Virus record (IMG/VR): IMGVR_UViG_3300046665_000548
Coordinates: 124,001-188,000 of that record
DNA: 64,000 nucleotides
Direction: 5' to 3' (one strand)
Shown here: in pieces, positions 11,483-46,151 of the stretch
Position numbering within the stretch: the first letter of the stretch is position 1
Layout: every line of letters begins with the position of its first letter
Notes under the pieces: generated by a model
What the model saw: the letters and a program-made list of their open reading frames with translations, nothing else
Database searches by the model: none
What the model was told of the DNA's origin: nothing
Translations under genes and position numbers: made by a program

Positions 11483-12637
11483 ATGACCCCAACATTCTGT
11501 GCTGCGGCTTGGTCGAACGCCGTTCTCAAAACAAACGGCCGAAGCTCTATCTGCTGCGCAAATTCGGAATCATACGAGGTGCCGCACCTCACCGAATCGC
11601 TTCAACATCCCGTTCGTCTCGCTGCACGCGAAACTATGTTGCTGGGTCAGCCCGCGCGCGGATGCGAATCCTGCTATATGACTGAGGCAAACGGATCAAA
11701 AAGCCTCAGACACGAATACAACAATATGTTCGAGAACTCGCTCGACCGCAAAAGGCTGAACGAGCCCGCATACAGCCCAATCATGTATTACGATCTCTCA
11801 CTGTCGAATACATGCAATCAGAAATGCAGAATGTGCGGCCCCGATTCCTCTACGCACTGGATAAAAGATTACGCCGCTCTCCAAAAAGAGGGAATAGCTC
11901 CGGCTCAGGAAAACCAAGCGCATAGTCAAATCAATTCAATCGATTCAATCATCGATTCGATGAAAAGAAGCCTTGTGATCAGGCTCTCACTGAAAGGGGG
12001 CGAACCCCTATACATGCGCGAGGTAAAAATTCTGCTGCGAAAGATGGTAGAAAATAATCTCCATAGACGAACAACCTTCCTCCAGATCATCACGAACGGA
12101 TCAGTAGCCGATCAAGAAACGCTCGATCTTCTTCGACATTTTCAAATCTGCTATATCACTCTAAGCATCGACGCGTGTGGTCCCCTCTACAATTACATTC
12201 GGGGATTTAACAAGCCGTTCGAAGAAGTCGAAGAATCATTCCGGAAGATCATCGAAGTGCTACCGAGACACGTCACGCCGCGCATCAACACGACTGTCCA
12301 AGCCCTCAACGTCCTGCATCTGAACGATCTCGAAATATGGATCAGAAAATTCTTCAACGGGCCAGTCGATCAATACCTGTCGTTGCTGATATACCCAAAT
12401 TTCCTCAACATCTCTAACCTTCCCCTCATCGTCAAAGAAACAGCCATCGCCCGGCTCCAGCCACTTGGAGCCAGAGCCAATCACATCATCGCTCGTCTGA
12501 ACGAAGAAGAAAATCCGGAACACTTTCGCCAGTTCTTCCCTTATACGAGGGCGCTCGATGCACGCCGCGACGAAAATCTTGAAAACGTAGCACCAGAACT
12601 TGCCGAAATGCTCAGTTACAAAAAAACTGAAAAATAG
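11483..12637 (+). CDS. radical SAM protein with N-terminal twitch/SPASM-like Cys cluster
   Basis: CNQKCRMC (CxxxCxxC), GGEP, N-terminal C...CC...CxxC; TAAATA 4 nt before the ATG. Confidence 0.85.
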   Translation: MTPTFCAAAWSNAVLKTNGRSSICCANSESYEVPHLTESLQHPVRLAARETMLLGQPARGCESCYMTEANGSKSLRHEYNNMFENSLDRKRLNEPAYSPIMYYDLSLSNTCNQKCRMCGPDSSTHWIKDYAALQKEGIAPAQENQAHSQINSIDSIIDSMKRSLVIRLSLKGGEPLYMREVKILLRKMVENNLHRRTTFLQIITNGSVADQETLDLLRHFQICYITLSIDACGPLYNYIRGFNKPFEEVEESFRKIIEVLPRHVTPRINTTVQALNVLHLNDLEIWIRKFFNGPVDQYLSLLIYPNFLNISNLPLIVKETAIARLQPLGARANHIIARLNEEENPEHFRQFFPYTRALDARRDENLENVAPELAEMLSYKKTEK

Positions 12638-12639
12638 TG

Positions 12640-12671
12640 TTGACTTTCGAAACATGGTCTGTGTATAAATA
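12640..12671 (+). promoter_or_regulatory. promoter of tRNA cluster 1 (TTGACT -35 overlapping T4-type late box TATAAATA)
   Basis: TTGACT 12640-12645, TATAAATA 12664-12671. Confidence 0.75.
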
Positions 12672-12674
12672 GAA

Positions 12675-12782
12675 ATGTTCGCGGATGGTCCGCGTCAAAA
12701 GGATTCGATACGTAAGATGTCCAGCTTGTTTAACAAACGCTTTTGGCGGCGCGTGCGCGCTGTCTCGGAGGTCGCAAGCTGA
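12675..12782 (+). CDS. attenuator leader peptide MFADGPRQKDSIRKMSSLFNKRFWRRVRAVSEVAS
   Basis: Codon run TTG TTT AAC AAA CGC TTT TGG CGG CGC GTG CGC matches the downstream tRNAs; 3' end overlaps the antiterminator arm (alternative start ATG at 12717). Confidence 0.75.
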   Translation: MFADGPRQKDSIRKMSSLFNKRFWRRVRAVSEVAS

Positions 12783-12813
12783 TCTGACGCTTTCACGTGT
12801 CATCAGGTTACCG

Positions 12814-12850
12814 AAGCCCTCCGAGGAAAATGATTTCCGGAGGGTTTTTT
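12814..12850 (+). terminator. attenuator terminator T1
   Basis: AAGCCCTCC/GGAGGGTTT stem plus T-tract. Confidence 0.8.
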
Positions 12851-12864
12851 CTTGTCTGCTTTGC

Positions 12865-12906
12865 AGAGCCCTCCCTGGAAAATCCTCGGAGGGCTTTTGT
12901 TGTTTT
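12865..12906 (+). terminator. attenuator terminator T2 (duplicate of T1)
   Basis: AGAGCCCTCC/GGAGGGCTTT stem plus TGTTGTTTT. Confidence 0.8.
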
Positions 12907-12939
12907 AGATAGGAGAAATACACGGGCGAATGCCCACAT

Positions 12940-13015
12940 GCTTCTGTAGCTCAGTTGGTAGAGCACTCGACTGAAAATCGGGGTGTCGGCGGTTCGAGCC
13001 CGCCTGGAAGCACCA
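12940..13015 (+). tRNA. tRNA-Phe(GAA)
   Basis: Cloverleaf, loop CT-GAA-AA, encoded CCA. Confidence 0.95.
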
Positions 13016-13031
13016 ATTCAATGCTGGTCAC

Positions 13032-13115
13032 GCGGGCGTGGCGGAATGGTTTAGACGCGCTGGCTTCAAACCCCAGTTCTTCGGAGTGGGGGTTCAAGTC
13101 CCTCCGCCCGCACCA
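13032..13115 (+). tRNA. tRNA-Leu(CAA)
   Basis: Class II, loop TT-CAA-AC, C31-C39 mismatch, A73, CCA. Confidence 0.85.
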
Positions 13116-13130
13116 GCATATACCAAGTTT

Positions 13131-13206
13131 AAGGGTGTAGCTCAATTGGTAGAGCGTCGGTCTCCAAAACCGAAGGTTGCAGGTTCGATGCCTGTCGCCC
13201 TTGCCA
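13131..13206 (+). tRNA. tRNA-Trp(CCA)
   Basis: Loop CT-CCA-AA, G73, CCA. Confidence 0.95.
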
Positions 13207-13207
13207 C

Positions 13208-13284
13208 GGTCTTATAGCTCAACTGGATAGAGCACCTGACTACGAATCAGGAGGTTTCAGGTTCGAGTCCTGATAAGACCGCCA
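13208..13284 (+). tRNA. tRNA-Arg(ACG)
   Basis: Loop CT-ACG-AA, A20, CCA. Confidence 0.95.
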
Positions 13285-13330
13285 CCTTATAGTCCACTTG
13301 GGCGCATCCACGGGGTGCTCTAGGCCGACT

Positions 13331-13405
13331 GGTCCGTTAGCGCAGCGGTAGCGCATTCGCCTTCGAAGCGACTGGTCGGCGGTTCGAATCCGTCACGGAC
13401 CTCCA
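13331..13405 (+). tRNA. tRNA-Arg(TCG), atypical identity elements
   Basis: Loop CT-TCG-AA, U73, no A20, CCA. Confidence 0.85.
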
Positions 13406-13448
13406 AATACGTGAAGGCTACGATAGTGCCAGCGAGACGATTTTTGAT

Positions 13449-13524
13449 GGGCGTATAACTCAGTTGGTAGAGTAGCTGACTCTTAATCAGTTTGTCGCAG
13501 GTTCGAACCCTGCTGCGCCCACCA
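13449..13524 (+). tRNA. tRNA-Lys(CTT)
   Basis: Loop CT-CTT-AA, A73, CCA. Confidence 0.95.
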
Positions 13525-13535
13525 AAAATCGTTTT

Positions 13536-13622
13536 GAGCCGGTGTCCCGAGTGGCGAAGGGGGCGGACTTTTAATCCGTTGTTGAGAGACCATCGTGGGT
13601 TCGAGTCCCACCCGGCTCCCCA
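13536..13622 (+). tRNA. tRNA with TTT (Lys) anticodon in a class II, Tyr-like body
   Basis: GAGCCGG/CCGGCTC acceptor, loop CT-TTT-AA, 15-nt variable region, C73, CCA. Confidence 0.8.
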
Positions 13623-13673: not shown

Positions 13674-14213
13674 ATGTTTTCTTGTGATGTTTGCTCTAAA
13701 GATTTTGCCACTTATCGCGGCTTAAACGGACACAAAAGACTCCATGGAGAATCCAGGGGGACGTATGTTGAAGGCTCTAGAGTTGGCGTTGGAGGGAAGA
13801 AACCGTTTAGACAAAACAAACCGTGCCAACGGTGCGGTCAAGAGTCTTTGAACAGCAAATACTGTTCGAATAAGTGTCAGAACGCTTATGAAAAAAGCTC
13901 TTTGATTGAGGACTGGCTGAACGGAAAAGACTCAGGTCTAGCTGCGGGCAACCGTCTGAAGAAATCAATACGTGATCATCTTCTTGCAGAAGCAGAATAC
14001 AAGTGCTCTTCATGCGGTTGGGACAAGATCAATCCAAAGAGCGGAAAGACTCCGTTAGAGATAGATCACATCGACGGAAATTCGGACAATTGCGTGAAAG
14101 ATAACCTAAGGGTCTTGTGCCCTAACTGTCATTCTCTGACGCCCACATATCGGGCGTTAAATTACGGTCGCGCAAATAAAGGTAGACTAAGATACTCTCG
14201 CCTGTGTAAATAG
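13674..14213 (+). CDS. HNH homing endonuclease with N-terminal C2H2 zinc finger
   Basis: CDVC...H-x3-H, LEIDHIDGN...NLRVLCPNCH; inserted within the tRNA cluster. Confidence 0.9.
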   Translation: MFSCDVCSKDFATYRGLNGHKRLHGESRGTYVEGSRVGVGGKKPFRQNKPCQRCGQESLNSKYCSNKCQNAYEKSSLIEDWLNGKDSGLAAGNRLKKSIRDHLLAEAEYKCSSCGWDKINPKSGKTPLEIDHIDGNSDNCVKDNLRVLCPNCHSLTPTYRALNYGRANKGRLRYSRLCK

Positions 14214-14220
14214 GGGTATT

Positions 14221-14296
14221 GGCCGGTTAGCTCAGCGGTAGTAGCGTTTCCTTTACATGGAAAATGTCGGGAGTTCGATCCTCTCACCGGCTACCA
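14221..14296 (+). tRNA. tRNA-Val(TAC)
   Basis: Loop TT-TAC-AT, A73, CCA. Confidence 0.9.
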
Positions 14297-25066: not shown

Positions 25067-25098
25067 TTGACATCGAAATAACACCTGTGTGATAAATA
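25067..25098 (+). promoter_or_regulatory. promoter of tRNA cluster 2
   Basis: TTGACA 25067-25072 and TAAATA 25093-25098. Confidence 0.75.
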
Positions 25099-25103
25099 AA
25101 ACC

Positions 25104-25178
25104 ATGAACAAGAATGTCACAACAACCGTCGTTATTATTACGACCGTACGAAGCGGGAGCTTCGAACGAACGATGTGA
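25104..25178 (+). CDS. attenuator leader peptide MNKNVTTTVVIITTVRSGSFERTM
   Basis: 11 consecutive Thr/Val/Ile codons; the 3' half forms the antiterminator 5' arm. Confidence 0.9.
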   Translation: MNKNVTTTVVIITTVRSGSFERTM

Positions 25179-25202
25179 CGCGAGTTCATCAGTTCAGTTT
25201 CG

Positions 25203-25233
25203 AAACTCCCAGGGAAACCTCGGGAGTTTTTTT
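25203..25233 (+). terminator. attenuator terminator directly before tRNA-Ile
   Basis: AAACTCCC-AGG-GAAA-CCT-C-GGGAG-TTTTTTT. Confidence 0.85.
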
Positions 25234-25308
25234 GTGCTTGTAGCTCAGTGGTAGAGCGCTCGGCTGATAACCGAGAGGTCGGAGGTTCGAGCCCTCCCAG
25301 GCACACCA
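25234..25308 (+). tRNA. tRNA-Ile(GAT)
   Basis: Loop CT-GAT-AA, CCA. Confidence 0.95.
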
Positions 25309-25325
25309 CATTTTTTGGAGGGAAG

Positions 25326-25523
25326 ATGAAGATCAGCGCGTTAGAACTACGACTCGCTGAGGCGAGAGAACGATTTGGTGATCTAGATGTCTACGTTGGA
25401 GAGGCAAGCTCTCAGCTTCGATCTCGTATCGACGTGAACGTGGATAGCGCCATCGCCAAAGGCGAAGACGAAACGGGTGAACGAAAAATCTGCATCGTCC
25501 AGGCTTATGTCATTTTCTCCTGA
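25326..25523 (+). CDS. small hypothetical protein within the tRNA cluster
   Basis: GGAGG SD, 65 aa. Confidence 0.6.
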   Translation: MKISALELRLAEARERFGDLDVYVGEASSQLRSRIDVNVDSAIAKGEDETGERKICIVQAYVIFS

Positions 25524-25547
25524 CTAAATTATTGAGTGAAATGGAAT

Positions 25548-25622
25548 GCTGGTGTAGCACAGCGGTAGTGCAGTCGCTTCGTAAGCGAAAGGTCGGGAGT
25601 TCAATCCTCTCCACCAGCACCA
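25548..25622 (+). tRNA. tRNA-Thr(CGT)
   Basis: Loop TT-CGT-AA, CCA. Confidence 0.93.
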
Positions 25623-25632
25623 TTTTCTCAAC

Positions 25633-25707
25633 GCCGGTTTAGCTCAGCGGTAGAGCAGCGGTTTTGTAAACCGAAGGTCGGGAGTTCAATCCTCTCAACC
25701 GGCACCA
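25633..25707 (+). tRNA. tRNA-Thr(TGT)
   Basis: Loop TT-TGT-AA, CCA. Confidence 0.93.
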
Positions 25708-25715
25708 CACGTTTA

Positions 25716-25790
25716 GCTGACTTAGCACAGTGGTAGTGCACCTCATTGGTAATGAGGAGGTCGCCGGTTCGAACCCGGCAGTCAGCACCA
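25716..25790 (+). tRNA. tRNA-Thr(GGT)
   Basis: Loop TT-GGT-AA, CCA. Confidence 0.95.
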
Positions 25791-25791
25791 C

Positions 25792-25866
25792 GGGAACATA
25801 GCTCAGCGGTAGAGCGTCTGCTCGACATGCAGAATGTCCAAGGTTCGATTCCTTGTGTTCCCACCA
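25792..25866 (+). tRNA. tRNA-Val(GAC) with C33
   Basis: Loop TC-GAC-AT, CCA. Confidence 0.9.
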
Positions 25867-33476: not shown

Positions 33477-33485
33477 CGGCATGCT

Positions 33486-33516
33486 CTCAAGAGTGTGTCG
33501 CCCACACACTTTTGAG
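33486..33516 (+). promoter_or_regulatory. 13-bp hairpin sequestering the leuS Shine-Dalgarno
   Basis: CTCAAGAGTGTGT/ACACACTTTTGAG includes GAG of GAGGA. Confidence 0.7.
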
Positions 33517-33522
33517 GACGAA

Positions 33523-34785
33523 ATGGAAAACGATTTTTACTGCACCGTCATGTTTCCGTATCCATCTGGAGCGGGACTGCACCTGGGCCATTACTACAAT
33601 TACGCGATCACCGACTCGTACTGCCGATGGCTGCGCTATCGCGGGCAGTCTGTGTTTCAACCATTCGGCTATGATGCCTTTGGTCTGCCCGCTGAGAACT
33701 ATGCACGCGAGATTGGCGGCGATCCGGCCGATGTGACGCGAGCGAACATTGCGCGTTTTCGCGTGCAAATGGATCGCATGAACACGCAGTTCGATGAGCG
33801 GCTGGTAACATGCGAGCCGCCATATGTGAAATGGACGCAGTGGCTGTTTCTGCGAATGCAGGAGCGCGGACTGGCTTACAAGGCTTGGGGTCGAGTGAAC
33901 TGGTGCCCATCGTGCGAAACCGTACTGGCTAATGAGCAGGTCCAAGACGGCCACTGCGAGCGCTGTAGTTCGGCCGTAGACCCACGAGAGATGAACCAGT
34001 GGTATTTCCGGATCACCGACTACAAAGACCGCCTGATTGCCGGACTGGATCATATCGATTATCCGGAAGGCACAAAGAAAATGCAGCGCGTCTGGCTGGA
34101 GAACCTGCAAGATTGGTGCGTGTCTCGTCAACGTAAATGGGGCTGCCCGATCCCGGTAGAGGGAGAAACGGATACCCTGGATACGTTCGTGGACTCGTCA
34201 TTTTACTTTCTGCGGTATCTGACCGATTCGACGGAGGAGTTTTTGCCAGAGGGTGCGTTCAAACAGGTCGATCTGTACGTGGGCGGGGCCGAGCATGCCT
34301 GTATGCATCTGATCTACGCGCGCTTTGTGCATATGTTTCTGTATGATATCGGCGTCGTTCCAGTTGAGGAGCCATTCAAAAAGGTCATTCACCAGGGCAT
34401 GATCACCAAGGATGGGGCAAAGATGTCCAAGTCCAAGGGAAACGCGGTCAACGCGGATGATTATGATGCGGATGAACTGCGGTTCTACCTGATGTTCCTG
34501 GGACATTACTTCGACGGTGGTGATTGGTCCGATCAACACATCACTGGCGTTCGTCGCTTTTTCGGCAAGATGAAACGTTGGATGAGCGAACCCGGCTCGG
34601 ATCAAATCGACACGTCTAAGTTCGAGGAACTGATCGACCGCAACACGCGAGCGTTCAAGTTCAACAAGGTGGTAAGCGGCTTCATGGAGTTCTATAATCA
34701 GAACAAATCACGTAAGCCTGATGCGGAAAGCTGTCAGAAAATCGAGACACTACTGCGAATATTCGCACCTGGATTCGGTAACTAA
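33523..34785 (+). CDS. leuS: leucyl-tRNA synthetase, minimal (no CP1 editing domain)
   Basis: MFPYPSGAGLHLGH, GYDAFGLPAEN, WCPSCETVLANEQV, DWCVSRQRKWG, DTFVDSS, KMSKS; only 420 aa. Confidence 0.9.
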   Translation: MENDFYCTVMFPYPSGAGLHLGHYYNYAITDSYCRWLRYRGQSVFQPFGYDAFGLPAENYAREIGGDPADVTRANIARFRVQMDRMNTQFDERLVTCEPPYVKWTQWLFLRMQERGLAYKAWGRVNWCPSCETVLANEQVQDGHCERCSSAVDPREMNQWYFRITDYKDRLIAGLDHIDYPEGTKKMQRVWLENLQDWCVSRQRKWGCPIPVEGETDTLDTFVDSSFYFLRYLTDSTEEFLPEGAFKQVDLYVGGAEHACMHLIYARFVHMFLYDIGVVPVEEPFKKVIHQGMITKDGAKMSKSKGNAVNADDYDADELRFYLMFLGHYFDGGDWSDQHITGVRRFFGKMKRWMSEPGSDQIDTSKFEELIDRNTRAFKFNKVVSGFMEFYNQNKSRKPDAESCQKIETLLRIFAPGFGN

Positions 34786-35391: not shown

Positions 35392-36193
35392 TGCAGATCG
35401 AGAACCGCATTAGTATCATCAAGCGTCGCATCAGCGATCTTGAGCAACGATCAGAAGAAAATGGCGATCATGTTTACCAGTTAAGGGATGATATCTTGTC
35501 TGGAAAGATCAGCCAAAGTGAATTTACCGCTAGACTAGATCGGGTTCGCGAAGTACATTCCAGTCTTCGTGTCGAGCTTGATGCTTTGGCGCGCGAAGCT
35601 GGAGCGTTACGTGGAGCAATTACATCGTGATTATCTAGATATCTTGGCGAAGAAGTTTCGCGCCGAGGTAATGATCGTAACTGCCGATGCTTTTATTGAT
35701 AGGCATCTCGACACTGGTCTGACAATCGAAGACATGGCGACGCGGTTGAACACCAGCGCCGATGCGATTCGCCGTATGTTCGACATGAATGACCCCGCTA
35801 CCAAACGGGGTCTCGGTCTGTTGTCCGATATGTGCGCCGCTTTGGGATGCCGCCCGGTCGTTACCATTCGCGATATCGGCAGTCCTCCTGAAATCACTAC
35901 AGATCGCGAAACTCGTACCGGGGACCATCTGCTCCAAGTGGCGAAATCGCTCGGGTGGCCCGACGATGGCGAGGGCGCGCTTGAGTTCGTTATGCGGAGG
36001 ACACGTGAGGTTGCGCTCGAAGATGCAGCAGCCACGACCGCGCTCCGAGAGATCGCGTCTATCGGTGCCCAAATCACTGATCCGGACAACGTATACGGGG
36101 TTCAGATGACGAACCTTGCCATCGCCGCGTTGGCGCGTCCTCCTGGTTCACAAAACACTTGACGTTTTTCTAATTCCTGTCATTGGATACGGC

Positions 36194-38002
36194 ATGCACG
36201 AATATCGTTCCCATACTTGCGACTCGCTGTCGCCATCACAAATCGATCAGACAGTTCGCCTGTCCGGTTGGTGTCACCGTATCCGTAACCATGGTGGTAT
36301 CCTTTTCATCGATCTTCGCGATCACTACGGCATCACGCAGTGCGTGATCGATCCCGCAGTTCTCCCTCAGGCTGAAAGCCTTGGTGAAGAATGGGTGATT
36401 CGCGTCGATGGTACAGTGCGATTTCGACCCCCAGGTACCGAGAATTCAAAACTCTCGACAGGAGAGATCGAGGTAAAGGTAGCTTCGCTTGACGTGCTCG
36501 GACCGGTCGTCGGGGCGCTGCCGATGCCTGTCGCGCATCTCCATTCCACGAGCGACGGTACGTTGCAGGAAGTCGAATATCCAGAAGACCTTCGGTTGAA
36601 ATATCGATTCTTGGACCTTCGCCGCGAACGGCTGCACGAGAACATGATGAAGCGAATGAAAATCATTCGCTGGCTGCGTCATCGCATGGAGGACGAAGGC
36701 TTCTTCGAATTCCAGACGCCCATCCTTACCGCATCGTCCCCAGAAGGGGCGCGAGACTTTCTCGTGCCTGCTCGGTTGCATCCAGGCAAGTTCTACGCGT
36801 TGCCGCAGGCTCCGCAGCAGTTCAAGCAACTTACCATGGTTGCTGGCTTCGACCGATACTTTCAAATTGCGCCATGCTTCCGTGATGAAGCTGCACGTTC
36901 AGATCGGTCACCGGGCGAGTTCTATCAACTCGACATCGAAATGAGTTTCGTAACTCAGGAAGACGTGTTTCGGGTTGTCGAACCGACGATTCGAGATTTG
37001 TTCAAGGAGTTCGGCGGCGACAAAGCCATCACCGAGACCTTCCCGCGTATTCCGTACAAGGAAGCGTTGCTGCGTTTTGGTACCGATAAGCCAGACCTGC
37101 GTAACCCTCTGCGTATTGTGGACGTGTCCAAGGCTCTCCAAGCCGACGACATGACACTCGCCCCTTTCAAGAAAGGCGTCGGCAGAGCTATCGTTGTGCC
37201 AGCCGCGATGCTGGCCGGGAAGTCGCGCAAGTGGTTCAAGGATATGGAAGGCTGGGCACAATCCCAAGGCGCGGCCGGTTTAGGATATCTGAGCGTCATG
37301 CTGACCGATGGTCGCGTGAGCTTCGCTGGACCGCTTGCTAAGTTTTTCGGTGAGCAATCTAGCGAGTTGGTTCGCGTCGCCGCCGACACAATCTTTGACG
37401 AGGGAGATGTCATTTTCTTCGCCGTTGGCGAGGAAAGCTCCACCATCAAATTCAGTGGACTGCTTCGTACAAAGCTCGGAGAGGAGCTTGGTCTGATCGA
37501 GCAAGACCGGTTCGAGTTCTGCTGGATCGTGGATTATCCCATGTTCGAGTGGAATTCTGACGAGAAGAAGATCGACTTCTCCCACAACCCCTTCTCGATG
37601 CCTCAGGGCGGCCTGGAGGCGCTTGAGGGCGATCCATTAGGTGTTCTTGCCTATCAGTACGATATCGTCTGTAATGGCATCGAGCTTTCGTCTGGTGCCA
37701 TCCGGAACCATCGACCAGATATCATGGAGAAGGCGTTCTCCATCGCTGGCTACGACAAGGAGGTGTTGGAAGAAAAGTTCGGCGGCATGCTGAATGCATT
37801 CCGTTGCGGAGCACCACCGCATGGTGGAATTGCACCGGGTATCGACCGCATGGTTATGCTTCTGTGCGAAGCTGAGAACCTGCGCGATGTCGTGCTGTTC
37901 CCAATGAACCAGAAAGGACAAGACCTGATGATGGGCGCTCCGTCTTCAGTAACTGCAAAGCAACTTGACGAGTTGAATATCAGGATCATTCCGAGGAAAT
38001 AA
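36194..38002 (+). CDS. aspS: aspartyl-tRNA synthetase (non-discriminating type)
   Basis: [50 protein letters not shown]. Confidence 0.95.
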
Positions 38003-44864: not shown

Positions 44865-46151
44865 ATGCATGACATTAACTACATTCGCGATAATCCAGAT
44901 GCTTTCGATGCTGGTCTGGCGGCGCGCGGCCTCAAATCTCAGTCCGAAATATTGATCAACATCGATCAGTCGCGTCGGCACGCCCTGACCGAGCTTCAGC
45001 AAAGACAATCCAAGCGCAACGAGTTGTCGGCGCAAATTGGCGCGGCGATGAAGGCTGGTCAACGCGATGAGGCCGAACGCCTTAAGACAGAGGTGGTAAC
45101 GCTTAAGCACGCAATCGAAGATTGGACCGGTCGCGCTGCAACGTCTCAGACCATACTAACGCATGAACTGGAGCGTATCCCGAATCTACCGGCCGCCGAT
45201 GTGCCCGTTGGCAAGGATGAAACTGCAAATCATTTGGAAACAGTTTGGGAGCCGGACGGTGGGAGGCGCGTGATCGCCAATCCGAAGCCTCACTGGGAGC
45301 TAGGCGAGGCCCTGGGGATGATGGACTTCCAAGCTGGCACGATGCTGGCTGGGCCGAGAAGCACTGTTCTCCGTGGTCCTCTGGCCAAGCTAGCGCGGGG
45401 TCTCGGCAACTGGATGATCGACACTATGACGTTGGAGGGATACAGCGAGGTCGATGTGCCTTGTATCGTCAACGGTGAGATCATGCACGGCACAGGCCAA
45501 CTCCCCAAGTTCGAGGCCGACGCTTATCGGCTGAACGATGCCGACCAATATCTGATCCCCACGGCCGAAGTACCTCTCACCAATCTTGTACGAGACCAGA
45601 TCGTAGATGAGGATGCGCTTCCTCTTCTGTATACGGCTCTGACCCCTTGCTTTCGAAAAGAAGCAGGATCGGCTGGCCGCGACGTGCGTGGCATGATGCG
45701 CCAGCACCAGTTCATGAAATGCGAAGTCGTGATGATCACTCAGCCAGAGTTTTCTGAGATCGACCACATGAAAATGCTCATGCATGTAGGCAACCTCCTC
45801 AAACGACTTTTCCTACCTCACCGGTACATGAAGTTGTGCAGCGGGGACATGGGCTTTTCGGCAAAGAAGACTTACGATTTCGAGGTTTGGCTTCCGAGCC
45901 AAGATGCGTATCGTGAGATTTCTTCCGTGTCGAATTGCGGAGATTTCCAGGCTAGGCGAATGAACGCTCGCTTCCGCAAAAAGGATGGCTCGATCCACTA
46001 TCTGCACACTCTCAATGGGTCTGCTATGGCTGTCGGCCGGACGTTGATTGCCGTCATGGAGAACTACCAGAACGACGACGGATCGATCACGATCCCAGAC
46101 GTTCTCATTCCCTATGTTGGTTTCGGTAAAATCGAAGCGGGCATGCGCTGA
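44865..46151 (+). CDS. serS: seryl-tRNA synthetase
   Basis: GTGQLPKF, YLIPTAEVPL, FRKEAGSAGRDVRGMMRQHQF, EISSVSNCGDFQARR, TLNGSAMAVGR. Confidence 0.96.
   Translation: MHDINYIRDNPDAFDAGLAARGLKSQSEILINIDQSRRHALTELQQRQSKRNELSAQIGAAMKAGQRDEAERLKTEVVTLKHAIEDWTGRAATSQTILTHELERIPNLPAADVPVGKDETANHLETVWEPDGGRRVIANPKPHWELGEALGMMDFQAGTMLAGPRSTVLRGPLAKLARGLGNWMIDTMTLEGYSEVDVPCIVNGEIMHGTGQLPKFEADAYRLNDADQYLIPTAEVPLTNLVRDQIVDEDALPLLYTALTPCFRKEAGSAGRDVRGMMRQHQFMKCEVVMITQPEFSEIDHMKMLMHVGNLLKRLFLPHRYMKLCSGDMGFSAKKTYDFEVWLPSQDAYREISSVSNCGDFQARRMNARFRKKDGSIHYLHTLNGSAMAVGRTLIAVMENYQNDDGSITIPDVLIPYVGFGKIEAGMR

What the first reader, a model, noticed from the sequence alone, without database searches (positions are those of the whole stretch)
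12764..12906. Tandem domino terminators in the cluster-1 attenuator
Seen: two near-duplicate terminators, T1 (12814-12850) and T2 (12865-12906). The T1 3' arm GGAGGGTTTT can pair with the T2 5' arm AGAGCCCTCC. The T1 5' arm AAGCCCTCCGAGGA (12814-12827) is a perfect 14-nt complement of the T2 3' arm TCCTCGGAGGGCTT (12883-12896). Inference: when the leader arm captures T1-5', the freed T1-3' captures T2-5', so one stalled ribosome disables both terminators. The default state has two terminators in series, giving tighter OFF and higher dynamic range.
Basis: partly seen in the sequence, partly recalled or inferred. Interest (0 to 1): 0.75.

Follow-up and report, generated by a model that had tools for sequence, protein, structure and literature searches.

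The report
Two linked terminators gating phage tRNAs
Two near-identical stop signals sit in series inside a leader-peptide attenuator that controls a cluster of tRNA genes in a 608-kb phage, and they are wired so that one stalled ribosome could weaken both, although that second step is only inferred.

Summary
T1 (12814-12850) and T2 (12865-12906) are near-duplicate hairpin-plus-U-tract terminators. The 14-nt T1-5'/T2-3' complement is perfect, and the 8-nt leader arm (12764-12771) is a perfect complement of the T1 5' arm.

The attenuator context holds. A blind scan of the 608-kb phage genome for promoter, short ORF and terminator returns exactly 8 units. All 8 lie upstream of tRNA clusters, and their leader codons match the cluster's anticodons; here the run is LFNKRFWRRVR before Phe, Leu, Trp, Arg, Arg, Lys, Lys and Val tRNAs. 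Three related huge-phage contigs carry 11 more.

Tandem terminators occur only in attenuators: 2 of 8 units here, none among the other 68 strong terminators, and one more in a relative.

The domino pairings (2:3, then 4:5) exist and follow the logic of the his-operon leader (B:C, D:E). Barrier estimates say 2:3 blocks T1 (12.5 kcal/mol). They also suggest T2 hairpin formation is slowed roughly 100- to 10,000-fold.

The 14-nt complement gives T2's 3' arm a second partner. At equilibrium the module folds as one compound hairpin that ends at T2's U-tract. T2 is therefore probably weakened, not abolished.

Verdict: partly supported, a new variant of a known kind. No transcript or bench data exist.

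The parts
12640..12671 (+). Sigma-70-type promoter: TTGACT (12640-12645), an 18-nt spacer, then TATAAATA (12664-12671). It lies immediately after the stop codon of the radical-SAM gene (11483-12637).
   Evidence: Sequence. The same TTGACN-N17/19-TA(T)AAATA element heads all 8 attenuator units. The built-in promoter scan missed it only because it requires T as the last base of the -10 hexamer.
12675..12782 (+). Leader ORF of 35 codons plus stop. The ATG lies 3 nt after TATAAATA, so the mRNA is probably leaderless. An in-frame ATG at 12717 is an alternative start.
   Evidence: Listed as an ORF and translated. It has no protein-family match. The other units also place the ATG 3-7 nt after the -10 element.
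12726..12758 (+). Regulatory codon run, codons 18-28: UUG UUU AAC AAA CGC UUU UGG CGG CGC GUG CGC. Ten of the 11 codons are read by tRNAs of the downstream cluster.
   Evidence: The best 10-codon window scores 9 of 10 cognate codons, p about 0.003 against random genome windows. tRNA anticodons are.
12739..12752 (+). Segment 1, which can pair with segment 2 (12757-12772) when no ribosome is present.
   Evidence: Seen in the minimum-energy folds (-16.9 kcal/mol). It is not better than shuffles (z -0.58), so this part is weakly supported.
12763..12772 (+). Segment 2, the anti-terminator ('leader arm'), in codons 30-32. It pairs with 12818-12826 of the T1 5' arm.
   Evidence: I5. Energy -12.6 kcal/mol. 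Barrier to the T1 hairpin about 12.5 kcal/mol. Marginal on its own, p 0.09.
12777..12806 (+). Spacer hairpin lying between segments 2 and 3.
   Evidence: -12 kcal/mol, z -2.4.
12814..12853 (+). T1: segment 3 (12814-12828), loop, segment 4 (12834-12847), and the U-tract from 12845.
   Evidence: It starts 34 nt after the leader stop codon, the canonical position in this family.
12855..12867 (+). Small apical hairpin between T1 and T2. It caps the 4:5 helix.
12865..12906 (+). T2: segment 5 (12865-12881), segment 6 (12883-12897), and the U-tract 12895-12906.
12940..13622 (+). Regulated tRNA genes: Phe(GAA), Leu(CAA), Trp(CCA), Arg(ACG), Arg(UCG), Lys(CUU), Lys(UUU).
   Evidence: Only 33 nt separate the end of T2 (12906) from the first tRNA (12940), and the scan found no separate promoter there.
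14221..14296 (+). tRNA-Val(UAC). It probably belongs to the same unit but is separated from it by an HNH endonuclease gene (13674-14213).
   Evidence: GUG codons occur in the leader run.

Best explanation
The region is a ribosome-mediated (leader-peptide) transcription attenuator for a phage tRNA cluster, built from six pairing segments.

Host RNA polymerase starts at the TTGACT/TATAAATA promoter. A ribosome translates a 35-codon leader whose codons 18-28 call for the very tRNAs encoded downstream.

When those charged tRNAs are plentiful, the ribosome runs to the stop codon and covers segment 2. T1 (3:4) then forms and terminates. Polymerases that leak through meet T2 (5:6).

When any of those tRNAs is scarce, the ribosome stalls on segment 1. 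Segment 2 pairs with segment 3, so T1 cannot form. The freed segment 4 pairs with segment 5 as it emerges. Segment 6 then has no free partner while the polymerase crosses the T2 U-tract.

This is the his-leader logic (A:B, C:D, E:F against B:C, D:E), except that the middle hairpin is itself a terminator.

Because segment 6 is perfectly complementary to segment 3 over 14 nt, it can slowly displace segment 2. T2 is therefore expected to be strongly slowed rather than abolished. After the polymerase has passed, the RNA should relax into one compound hairpin.

Shown here: the sequences, the pairings, their energies and their recurrence. Inferred: the transcription start, translation of the leader, stalling, and actual termination and read-through.
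For: Attenuator class:
- A generic scan for promoter, short ORF and terminator finds 8 loci in 608 kb. All 8 lie upstream of tRNA genes.
- Codon runs match the downstream anticodons, with p of 0.003 or less at four loci.
- The Gln/Leu and Ser units were found by inspection.
- Eleven more units occur in three related huge-phage contigs.
- Anti-terminator complementarity is individually significant in 3 of 8 units and marginal in 3 more.

T1 is the canonical terminator, 34 nt after the stop codon.

Tandem terminators are specific to attenuators. Of 78 compact strong terminators, the only two same-strand pairs within 100 nt are this one and the Gln/Leu unit. A third tandem pair sits in the Ser/Cys/Tyr/His unit of a relative.

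Energetics for this unit:
- 2:3 -12.6, 3:4 -15.7, 4:5 -20.7, 5:6 -18.0 kcal/mol.
- Barrier from 2:3 to 3:4: 12.5 kcal/mol.
- T2's own hairpin forms over 3.2 kcal/mol when T1 is folded, but over 9.9 kcal/mol when 4:5 is formed.
- The 3:6 helix stays 3.5-5 kcal/mol uphill until nucleotide 12892 has emerged.

In the Gln/Leu unit the domino state leaves the last 8 nt of T2 unpaired, with a 10.8 kcal/mol barrier.

The his leader uses the same two-step alternative pairing (PMC4046918, read).
Against: - There are no transcript, 3'-end or probing data; no sequencing run holds this locus.
- There is no close relative with which to test covariation of 4:5 or 2:3.
- At equilibrium the T2 3' arm is paired (P about 0.98) in every ribosome state modelled, mostly with segment 3.
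- The route to that fold has only a 6.9 kcal/mol barrier, with a mean passage time of 0.014-1.4 s. That is comparable with the polymerase's dwell on a U-tract.
- The 2:3 pairing is short (8-9 bp) and only marginal against shuffles (p 0.09).
- The 1:2 pairing is no better than shuffles.
- 4:5 and 3:6 complementarity follow automatically from T1 and T2 being duplicates.
Confidence: 0.55

Rival explanations
1. T2 is an independent, unconditional back-up terminator created by a local duplication of T1. Only T1 is regulated by the leader. The cross-complementarity is a by-product of the duplication. T2 simply lowers output in both states and insulates the tRNA genes from read-through coming from the upstream radical-SAM operon.
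For: T1 and T2 are near-duplicates. Any duplicated hairpin can cross-pair. No compensatory change specific to 4:5 could be shown. There is no terminator between the radical-SAM gene and the promoter, so T1/T2 are also that operon's first terminators. At equilibrium T2's 3' arm is always paired.
Against: An unconditional T2 would cut induced and basal output alike, which gives the attenuator nothing. Tandem terminators occur only in attenuators in this genome, 2 of 8 against 0 of the other 68 terminators, and again in a relative. The Gln/Leu unit has its own upstream terminator and still carries a tandem pair. Once 4:5 is formed, the barrier to T2's own hairpin rises from 3.2 to 9.9 kcal/mol.
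Confidence: 0.25
2. The functional unit is the compound hairpin (3:6 enclosing 4:5) rather than two terminators. It would be a single very stable structure that ends at the T2 U-tract. Possible roles are as a strong terminator, as a protective or processing structure at the 5' end of the tRNA precursor, or as the body of a stable attenuator-derived small RNA.
For: 3:6 is the strongest helix in the whole set: -30.4 kcal/mol, against -17.7 to -23.8 for the ten terminators' own stems. It is perfect over 14 bp, whereas the own stems of T1 and T2 carry a bulge or mismatches. The compound fold is the minimum-energy structure in all three tandem units. Attenuator-derived small RNAs are known in Sinorhizobium (PMC6614838; I saw only its abstract).
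Against: During transcription segment 4 emerges some 45 nt before segment 6, so T1 folds first. The barrier from 3:4+5:6 to the compound fold is 13.3 kcal/mol. T1 has the better U-tract and sits at the family's canonical position. In the Gln/Leu unit 3:6 is no stronger than the other helices.
Confidence: 0.12
3. This is not an attenuator at all. T1 and T2 are ordinary 3' terminators of the upstream operon or of a small non-coding RNA, and the short ORF and its codon run are chance.
For: The built-in scan did not report the promoter or these terminators. No known RNA family is matched above threshold.
Against: Eight of eight units of the same design precede tRNA clusters with matching codons, and 11 more occur in relatives. 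The spacing from stop codon to terminator is conserved. There is no room for a promoter between T2 and the first tRNA.
Confidence: 0.03

Closest known systems
Histidine operon leader of Salmonella/E. coli (hisL attenuator; Rfam RF00514)
   Same: A leader peptide with a run of regulatory codons. Six pairing segments give three hairpins in the terminating state (A:B, C:D, E:F) and two alternative hairpins (B:C, D:E) when the ribosome stalls. That is the same two-step 'domino' (PMC4046918). It is also the best, though sub-threshold, Rfam match to 12800-12902.
   Different: In his the middle hairpin C:D is not a terminator; here it has a six-U tract and is one. The genes controlled here are tRNAs, not biosynthetic enzymes. 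The codon run mixes seven amino acids. There is no sequence homology: 21.1 bits against a gathering score of 49.
trp operon attenuator (trpL; segments 1:2, 2:3, 3:4)
   Same: The position of the regulatory codons in segment 1, a segment 2 inside the leader ORF that is covered by a ribosome at the stop codon, and a 3:4 terminator. This comparison rests on established knowledge recalled from memory.
   Different: trp has one terminator and one amino acid, and senses tRNA charging as a proxy for amino-acid supply. Here there is an extra terminator, and the output is the tRNA itself.
Multi-amino-acid leaders (thr, ilvGMEDA, ilvBN, leu)
   Same: Leader peptides that mix codons for several amino acids. 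The neighbouring unit in this window (VTTTVVIITTV) looks like a thr/ilv leader. The comparison is recalled from memory.
   Different: Those operons make the amino acids. Here each codon type corresponds to an anticodon encoded downstream.
pheST (pheM leader) attenuation and T-box leaders
   Same: Both are leaders that tune a component of the translation apparatus (an aminoacyl-tRNA synthetase) to tRNA status. T-boxes are also known in tandem. This is recalled from memory.
   Different: No T-box or other known leader family is detected here. T-boxes bind uncharged tRNA directly and need no ribosome. The targets in those systems are synthetases, not tRNA genes.
Fail-safe tandem intrinsic terminators at operon ends
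   Same: Two hairpin-plus-U-tract elements in series, about 50 nt apart.
   Different: Such pairs normally have unrelated stems and follow a structural gene. Here the two are near-duplicates, lie between a promoter with its leader ORF and the regulated genes, and occur only in attenuators in this genome.

Membership tests
Ribosome-mediated (leader-peptide) transcription attenuator | A promoter followed by a short ORF that carries a run of regulatory codons | tested here: met
   Promoter 12640-12671 and ORF 12675-12782. Nine of 10 codons in the best window are cognate to the downstream tRNAs, p about 0.003. The design is repeated in 8 of 8 scan hits.
Ribosome-mediated (leader-peptide) transcription attenuator | An intrinsic terminator between the leader ORF and the regulated genes | tested here: met
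   T1 and T2 are hairpins with U-tracts. T1 starts 34 nt after the leader stop codon, as in the other units.
Ribosome-mediated (leader-peptide) transcription attenuator | An anti-terminator pairing that excludes the terminator, is left free by a ribosome stalled on the regulatory codons, and is covered by a ribosome at the stop codon | tested here: met
   12764-12771 pairs with 12818-25 perfectly, with a 12.5 kcal/mol barrier to T1. It lies in codons 30-32, two codons after the run and three to five codons before the stop. Statistically it is only marginal when taken alone, p 0.09. The ribosome footprint is assumed from general knowledge.
Ribosome-mediated (leader-peptide) transcription attenuator | A 1:2 protector or pause hairpin that forms when the leader is not translated | tested here: inconclusive
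   A 1:2 hairpin is predicted at -16.9 kcal/mol, but it is no better than shuffles (z -0.58).
Ribosome-mediated (leader-peptide) transcription attenuator | Read-through that depends on translation and on the supply of the cognate charged tRNA | not testable with these tools
   No RNA data exist for this uncultured phage.
his-type six-segment leader (RF00514) | Six segments that form A:B, C:D, E:F or alternatively B:C, D:E | tested here: met
   The pairings 1:2, 3:4 and 5:6, and alternatively 2:3 and 4:5, all have favourable energies.
his-type six-segment leader (RF00514) | Sequence and structure match to the Rfam covariance model | tested here: not met
   21.1 bits, E 0.25, against a gathering score of 49. 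The resemblance is in logic only.
T-box riboswitch | Specifier loop, T-box motif and terminator/anti-terminator, as detected by the Rfam model | tested here: not met
   No hit at the gathering threshold or at E up to 10.
Fail-safe tandem terminators of an upstream operon | Position directly after a structural gene, with no promoter or leader ORF in between | tested here: not met
   There are 176 nt between the radical-SAM stop codon (12637) and T1, and they hold the promoter and the leader ORF.

The most novel reading that the evidence does not exclude
Huge phages meter their own tRNA supply by demand. Each tRNA cluster sits behind a leader peptide that is a codon-by-codon mirror of the cluster's anticodons, so a shortage of any one of those tRNAs opens the gate. 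That shortage could arise, for example, after host shut-off or an attack by an anticodon nuclease.

In the tandem-terminator variant the two coupled terminators would act as a time gate. The ribosome must stay stalled while the polymerase crosses both U-tracts, about 55 nt apart. Brief pauses are rejected and only sustained tRNA shortage is passed on.
Probability: 0.3. Interest if true: 0.85.

Novelty: new variant of a known kind. Interest (0 to 1): 0.7.

Why it matters
Leader-peptide attenuation is a textbook mechanism, but it is known for amino-acid biosynthesis and a few synthetase genes, not for tRNA genes.

Here a 608-kb phage and its relatives place it in front of most of their tRNA clusters, with the leader codons matched to the anticodons. 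That would be a direct negative-feedback loop on tRNA supply during infection. It gives a concrete, testable answer to how and when phage tRNAs are expressed.

Six searches of the held literature found no description of this arrangement.

The tandem, mutually complementary terminators are a natural example of a two-stage RNA switch. If both stages respond to one ribosome, the arrangement raises dynamic range without any protein factor. That is of interest for RNA-switch design and for models of co-transcriptional folding.

Tried and rejected
**Relatives for covariation**
- Blastn against phage records gave only tRNA-level hits.
- Searches with the upstream radical-SAM protein found nothing closer than 40% identity and no synteny.
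- An exact pattern for T1 found nothing in IMG/VR.
- The more distant relatives, found through the aspartyl-tRNA synthetase, share the design but not this unit's sequence.

**Transcript evidence**
- Only DNA-type or unclassified runs were listed, each holding 5-7% of the sampled words, which I take to be the conserved tRNA parts.

**Known RNA families**
- Nothing was found above threshold.

**Protein-coding readings of the region**
- The 75-aa + strand ORF, the 103-aa - strand ORF and the leader peptide have no family match. The two long ORFs run through the hairpins, so they were rejected as genes.

**A dispersed repeat family**
- Rejected: T1 and T2 are the only such hairpins in the genome.

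**Equilibrium folding with ribosome masks**
- This cannot separate the models, because terminator-competent folds dominate in every state, as is usual for attenuators.

**Base-pair-level stochastic co-transcriptional simulation**
- Not attempted: no Kinfold was available and a Python version would be too slow. One-dimensional barrier and first-passage estimates were used instead. Their outcome depends on an assumed elementary rate of 1e6 to 1e8 per second.

**Compensatory changes specific to 4:5**
- Comparison of the arms by eye showed none that duplication would not also give.

Full report
**Setting**

The window is bases 124001-188000 of a single 607,744-bp virus record. The record has 51.7% G+C, 57 tRNA genes and a permuted tmRNA. 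The genes around the finding are phage-like: a radical-SAM protein at 11483-12637, an HNH endonuclease at 13674-14213, and several aminoacyl-tRNA synthetases further on.

The finding lies in the 302-nt gap between the radical-SAM stop codon (12637) and tRNA-Phe (12940). tRNA-Phe is the first of seven tRNAs: Phe, Leu-CAA, Trp, Arg-ACG, Arg-UCG, Lys-CUU and Lys-UUU. tRNA-Val-UAC follows after the HNH gene.

**Checking the observation**

- 12814-12827 and 12883-12896 are a perfect 14-nt inverted repeat.
- 12764-12771 and 12818-12825 are a perfect 8-nt inverted repeat.
- The two hairpins are near-duplicates. Direct repeats are 88% identical over 17 nt and 92% over 12 nt, and the alignment has 79% mean column identity.
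- Each folds as a G+C-rich hairpin followed by a U-run: T1 at -20.0 kcal/mol and T2 at -21.8 kcal/mol.
- They are the only CCCTCC...GGAGGG hairpins in the genome, so this is a local duplication and not a dispersed repeat.
- The module as a whole folds at -48.7 kcal/mol, z -6.6.

**What the region is**

Reading the sequence upstream of every tRNA cluster in the genome showed a repeated unit. Its parts are:
- a promoter, TTGACN-N17/19-TA(T)AAATA;
- an ATG 3-7 nt after it, or in one case a Shine-Dalgarno-led ATG;
- a short ORF;
- a hairpin with a U-tract;
- then the tRNA genes.

The middle of each short ORF spells the amino acids, and the very codons, read by the tRNAs that follow.

| Leader run | tRNAs that follow |
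|---|---|
| LFNKRFWRRVR | Phe, Leu, Trp, Arg, Arg, Lys, Lys, Val (this unit) |
| VTTTVVIITTV | Ile, Thr x3, Val |
| LYPMPCYP | Tyr, Pro, Leu, Pro, Met, Cys, Pro, Cys |
| HQHSHH | His |
| LLQQLQL | Gln and Leu |
| SQSSSSSSAS | Ser x4 |
| NRNNSNN | Asn x2 |
| DEREED | Asp, Glu x3 |

I then ran a blind scan of both strands for 'TTGAC promoter, short ORF, terminator within 150 nt'. It returned exactly these 8 loci and nothing else in 608 kb.

Against random genome windows, the codon match has p of 0.003 or less at four loci. The terminator starts 26-34 nt after the leader stop codon in seven of the eight units. A segment complementary to the terminator's 5' arm lies just after the codon run; it is individually significant in three units and marginal in three.

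The design is not private to this genome. Three huge-phage contigs were found through the aspartyl-tRNA synthetase, at 51-57% identity. They carry 59, 71 and 23 tRNA hits, and I found 11 more such leaders in them. Examples are LRLKLLRKW before Arg/Leu/Lys, HSYCYSSS before Ser/Cys/Tyr/His, and YIMFV..VVW before Trp/Tyr/Phe/Val/Ile/Met.

I therefore take it as very likely (about 0.9) that 12640-12906 is a leader-peptide attenuator of the tRNA cluster. No protein family, known RNA family or T-box explains the region.

**Anatomy of this unit**

| Part | Coordinates |
|---|---|
| Segment 1 | 12739-12752, inside the codon run |
| Segment 2 | 12763-12772, codons 30-32 |
| Spacer hairpin | 12777-12806 |
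| Segment 3 | 12814-12828 |
| Segment 4 | 12834-12847, U-tract from 12845 |
| Small apical hairpin | 12855-12867 |
| Segment 5 | 12865-12881 |
| Segment 6 | 12883-12897, U-tract to 12906 |

Evaluated energies, in kcal/mol:

| Pairing | Energy |
|---|---|
| 1:2 | -16.4 |
| 2:3 | -12.6 |
| 3:4 core | -15.7 |
| 4:5 with its apical hairpin | -20.7 |
| 5:6 core | -18.0 |
| 3:6 plus 4:5 | -48.7 |
| 2:3 plus 4:5 | -33.3 |
| 3:4 plus 5:6 | -39.9 |

A ribosome at the stop codon (12780-12782) would cover segment 2. A ribosome stalled with its A site on codons 21-26 would cover segment 1 and leave segment 2 free. The footprint size is assumed from general knowledge.

**Does the domino work?**

*Step one is well supported.* Once 2:3 has formed, the estimated barrier to the T1 hairpin is 12.5 kcal/mol. 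That is far too slow to matter during transcription.

*Step two is plausible.* Segment 4 is then free. Segment 5 pairs with it as it emerges, giving -20.7 kcal/mol, z -3.35. The 4:5 hairpin is not followed by a U-run.

With 4:5 formed, the barrier to T2's own hairpin rises from 3.2 to 9.9 kcal/mol.

*The difficulty is the 14-nt complement.* Segment 6 can pair with segment 3 by displacing segment 2, whose 8 nt are identical to the core of segment 6 (D4). The resulting compound hairpin ends at the T2 U-tract, and it is the equilibrium fold in every ribosome state I modelled.

The displacement is a near-isoenergetic exchange. It stays 3.5-5 kcal/mol uphill, with occupancy below 0.4%, until nucleotide 12892 is out of the polymerase. 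The overall barrier is 6.9 kcal/mol. Mean passage time is 0.014-1.4 s for elementary rates of 1e8 to 1e6 per second.

That overlaps the time a polymerase spends on a U-tract, so the calculation cannot decide the outcome.

What it does show is that T2 hairpin closure is slowed by roughly two to four orders of magnitude in the stalled state compared with the default state. This is my comparison of the barrier-derived rates. That is enough for T2 to add dynamic range: any reduction of T2's efficiency under stalling means the two terminators together discriminate better than T1 alone.

**Independent support from other tandem units**

Of 78 compact strong terminators in the genome, only two same-strand pairs lie within 100 nt of each other. 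They are this one and the Gln/Leu attenuator at genome 253191-253122 on the minus strand. That is 2 of 8 attenuators against 0 of the other 68 terminators.

In the Gln/Leu unit 2:3 is -18.6, 4:5 is -20.6 and 3:6 is -19.0 kcal/mol. The domino state leaves the last 8 nt of T2 unpaired, and the barrier to a terminator-competent fold is 10.8 kcal/mol.

The two units share the sequence just after T2 (the U-run followed by GGAGAAAU). The tandem arrangement may therefore predate their divergence and have been kept in both.

A third tandem pair, again of mutually similar hairpins, sits in the Ser/Cys/Tyr/His attenuator of a related 578-kb contig. There 4:5 (11 bp) is stronger than T1's own stem.

Cross-pairing between tandem partners is -19.6 and -21.0 kcal/mol. 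That is stronger than between terminators of different loci, which average -13.5 with sd 3.3.

None of this separates selection for cross-pairing from the simple fact that duplication is the easiest way to gain a second terminator. I could not find a compensatory change that only 4:5 would explain.

**Comparison with known systems**

The logic is that of the his-operon leader, where a stalled ribosome allows B:C and then D:E to form in place of the E:F terminator (PMC4046918). The differences are:
- the middle hairpin here is itself a terminator;
- the codon run mixes seven amino acids;
- the controlled genes are tRNAs.

The best Rfam match to 12800-12902 is in fact His_leader. At 21 bits against a threshold of 49 this is a resemblance, not membership.

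Six full-text searches found no report of leader-peptide attenuators on phage tRNA genes, or of coupled tandem terminators in an attenuator. That library is incomplete, so this is absence of evidence only.

**Verdict**

- The attenuator reading is strongly supported by internal and cross-genome replication.
- The domino reading is partly supported. The pairings, their order of synthesis and their recurrence fit.
- The perfect 3:6 complement argues that T2 is weakened rather than switched off in this unit.
- Nothing has been measured.

Noticed in passing
window 25067-25226, then tRNAs at 25234-25866: A second attenuator of the same design lies in the window. It has the promoter TTGACA..GATAAATA, a leader ORF at 25104-25178 (MNKNVTTTVVIITTVRSGSFERTM), and a single terminator at 25206-25226, 8 nt before tRNA-Ile. 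Thr x3 and Val tRNAs follow. Ten of 10 codons in the best window are cognate, and none of 1500 random windows did as well.
   Followed up: partly
genome-wide (G000:C1), and loci L009-L028 of related contigs: Eight leader-peptide attenuators precede tRNA clusters in this genome. At least 11 more occur in three related huge-phage contigs (IMG/VR records of 517, 578 and 240 kb). Many leaders begin with MF(A). The His and Ser leaders share the tail GTGATGCGATA(A/G)CGCG, which suggests that the units are paralogues.
   Followed up: partly
genome 253282-253122, minus strand (outside the window): The Gln/Leu attenuator (leader MFKNLLQQLQLTNEGQPRVQ) also has two tandem, mutually complementary terminators. 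A small protein gene lies between them and the tRNAs.
   Followed up: yes
window 12664-12677 and about ten other sites in the genome: TATAAATA followed 3-7 nt later by ATG recurs, also in front of ordinary genes. This suggests that the phage makes many leaderless mRNAs.
   Followed up: no
window 13674-14213: An HNH homing-type endonuclease gene with an N-terminal C2H2 zinc finger is inserted between tRNA-Lys and tRNA-Val, splitting the cluster.
   Followed up: no
window 13536-13622: tRNA-Lys(UUU) is called at 87 nt, about 11 nt longer than its neighbours, and scores lower against the tRNA model (49.8 bits). It may carry an insertion.
   Followed up: no
window 33481-34785, 36116-38002, 44865-46151: Phage-encoded aminoacyl-tRNA synthetases: a class I enzyme that looks like MetRS, an aspartyl-type class II enzyme, and seryl-tRNA synthetase.
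   Followed up: no
genome 1944-2020, 4091-4256 and 576377-576796 (outside the window): ARAGORN calls a tRNA with a four-base anticodon (GGAA), two tRNAs with anticodon CUA (amber-suppressor type; relatives have them too), and a permuted two-piece tmRNA with the tag ANDNVAVSEYALAA. This hints at an alphaproteobacterial host and possibly at recoding of TAG.
   Followed up: no
window 12920-12939: A short G+C-rich hairpin lies immediately before tRNA-Phe. The scan scored it as a minus-strand terminator-like site. It may instead belong to the tRNA precursor's 5' leader.
   Followed up: no
window 12732-12740 and 12893-12901: A 9-nt imperfect inverted repeat (I4, 89% complementary) links codons 20-22 of the leader to the end of T2 and its U-tract. 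It is probably chance.
   Followed up: no
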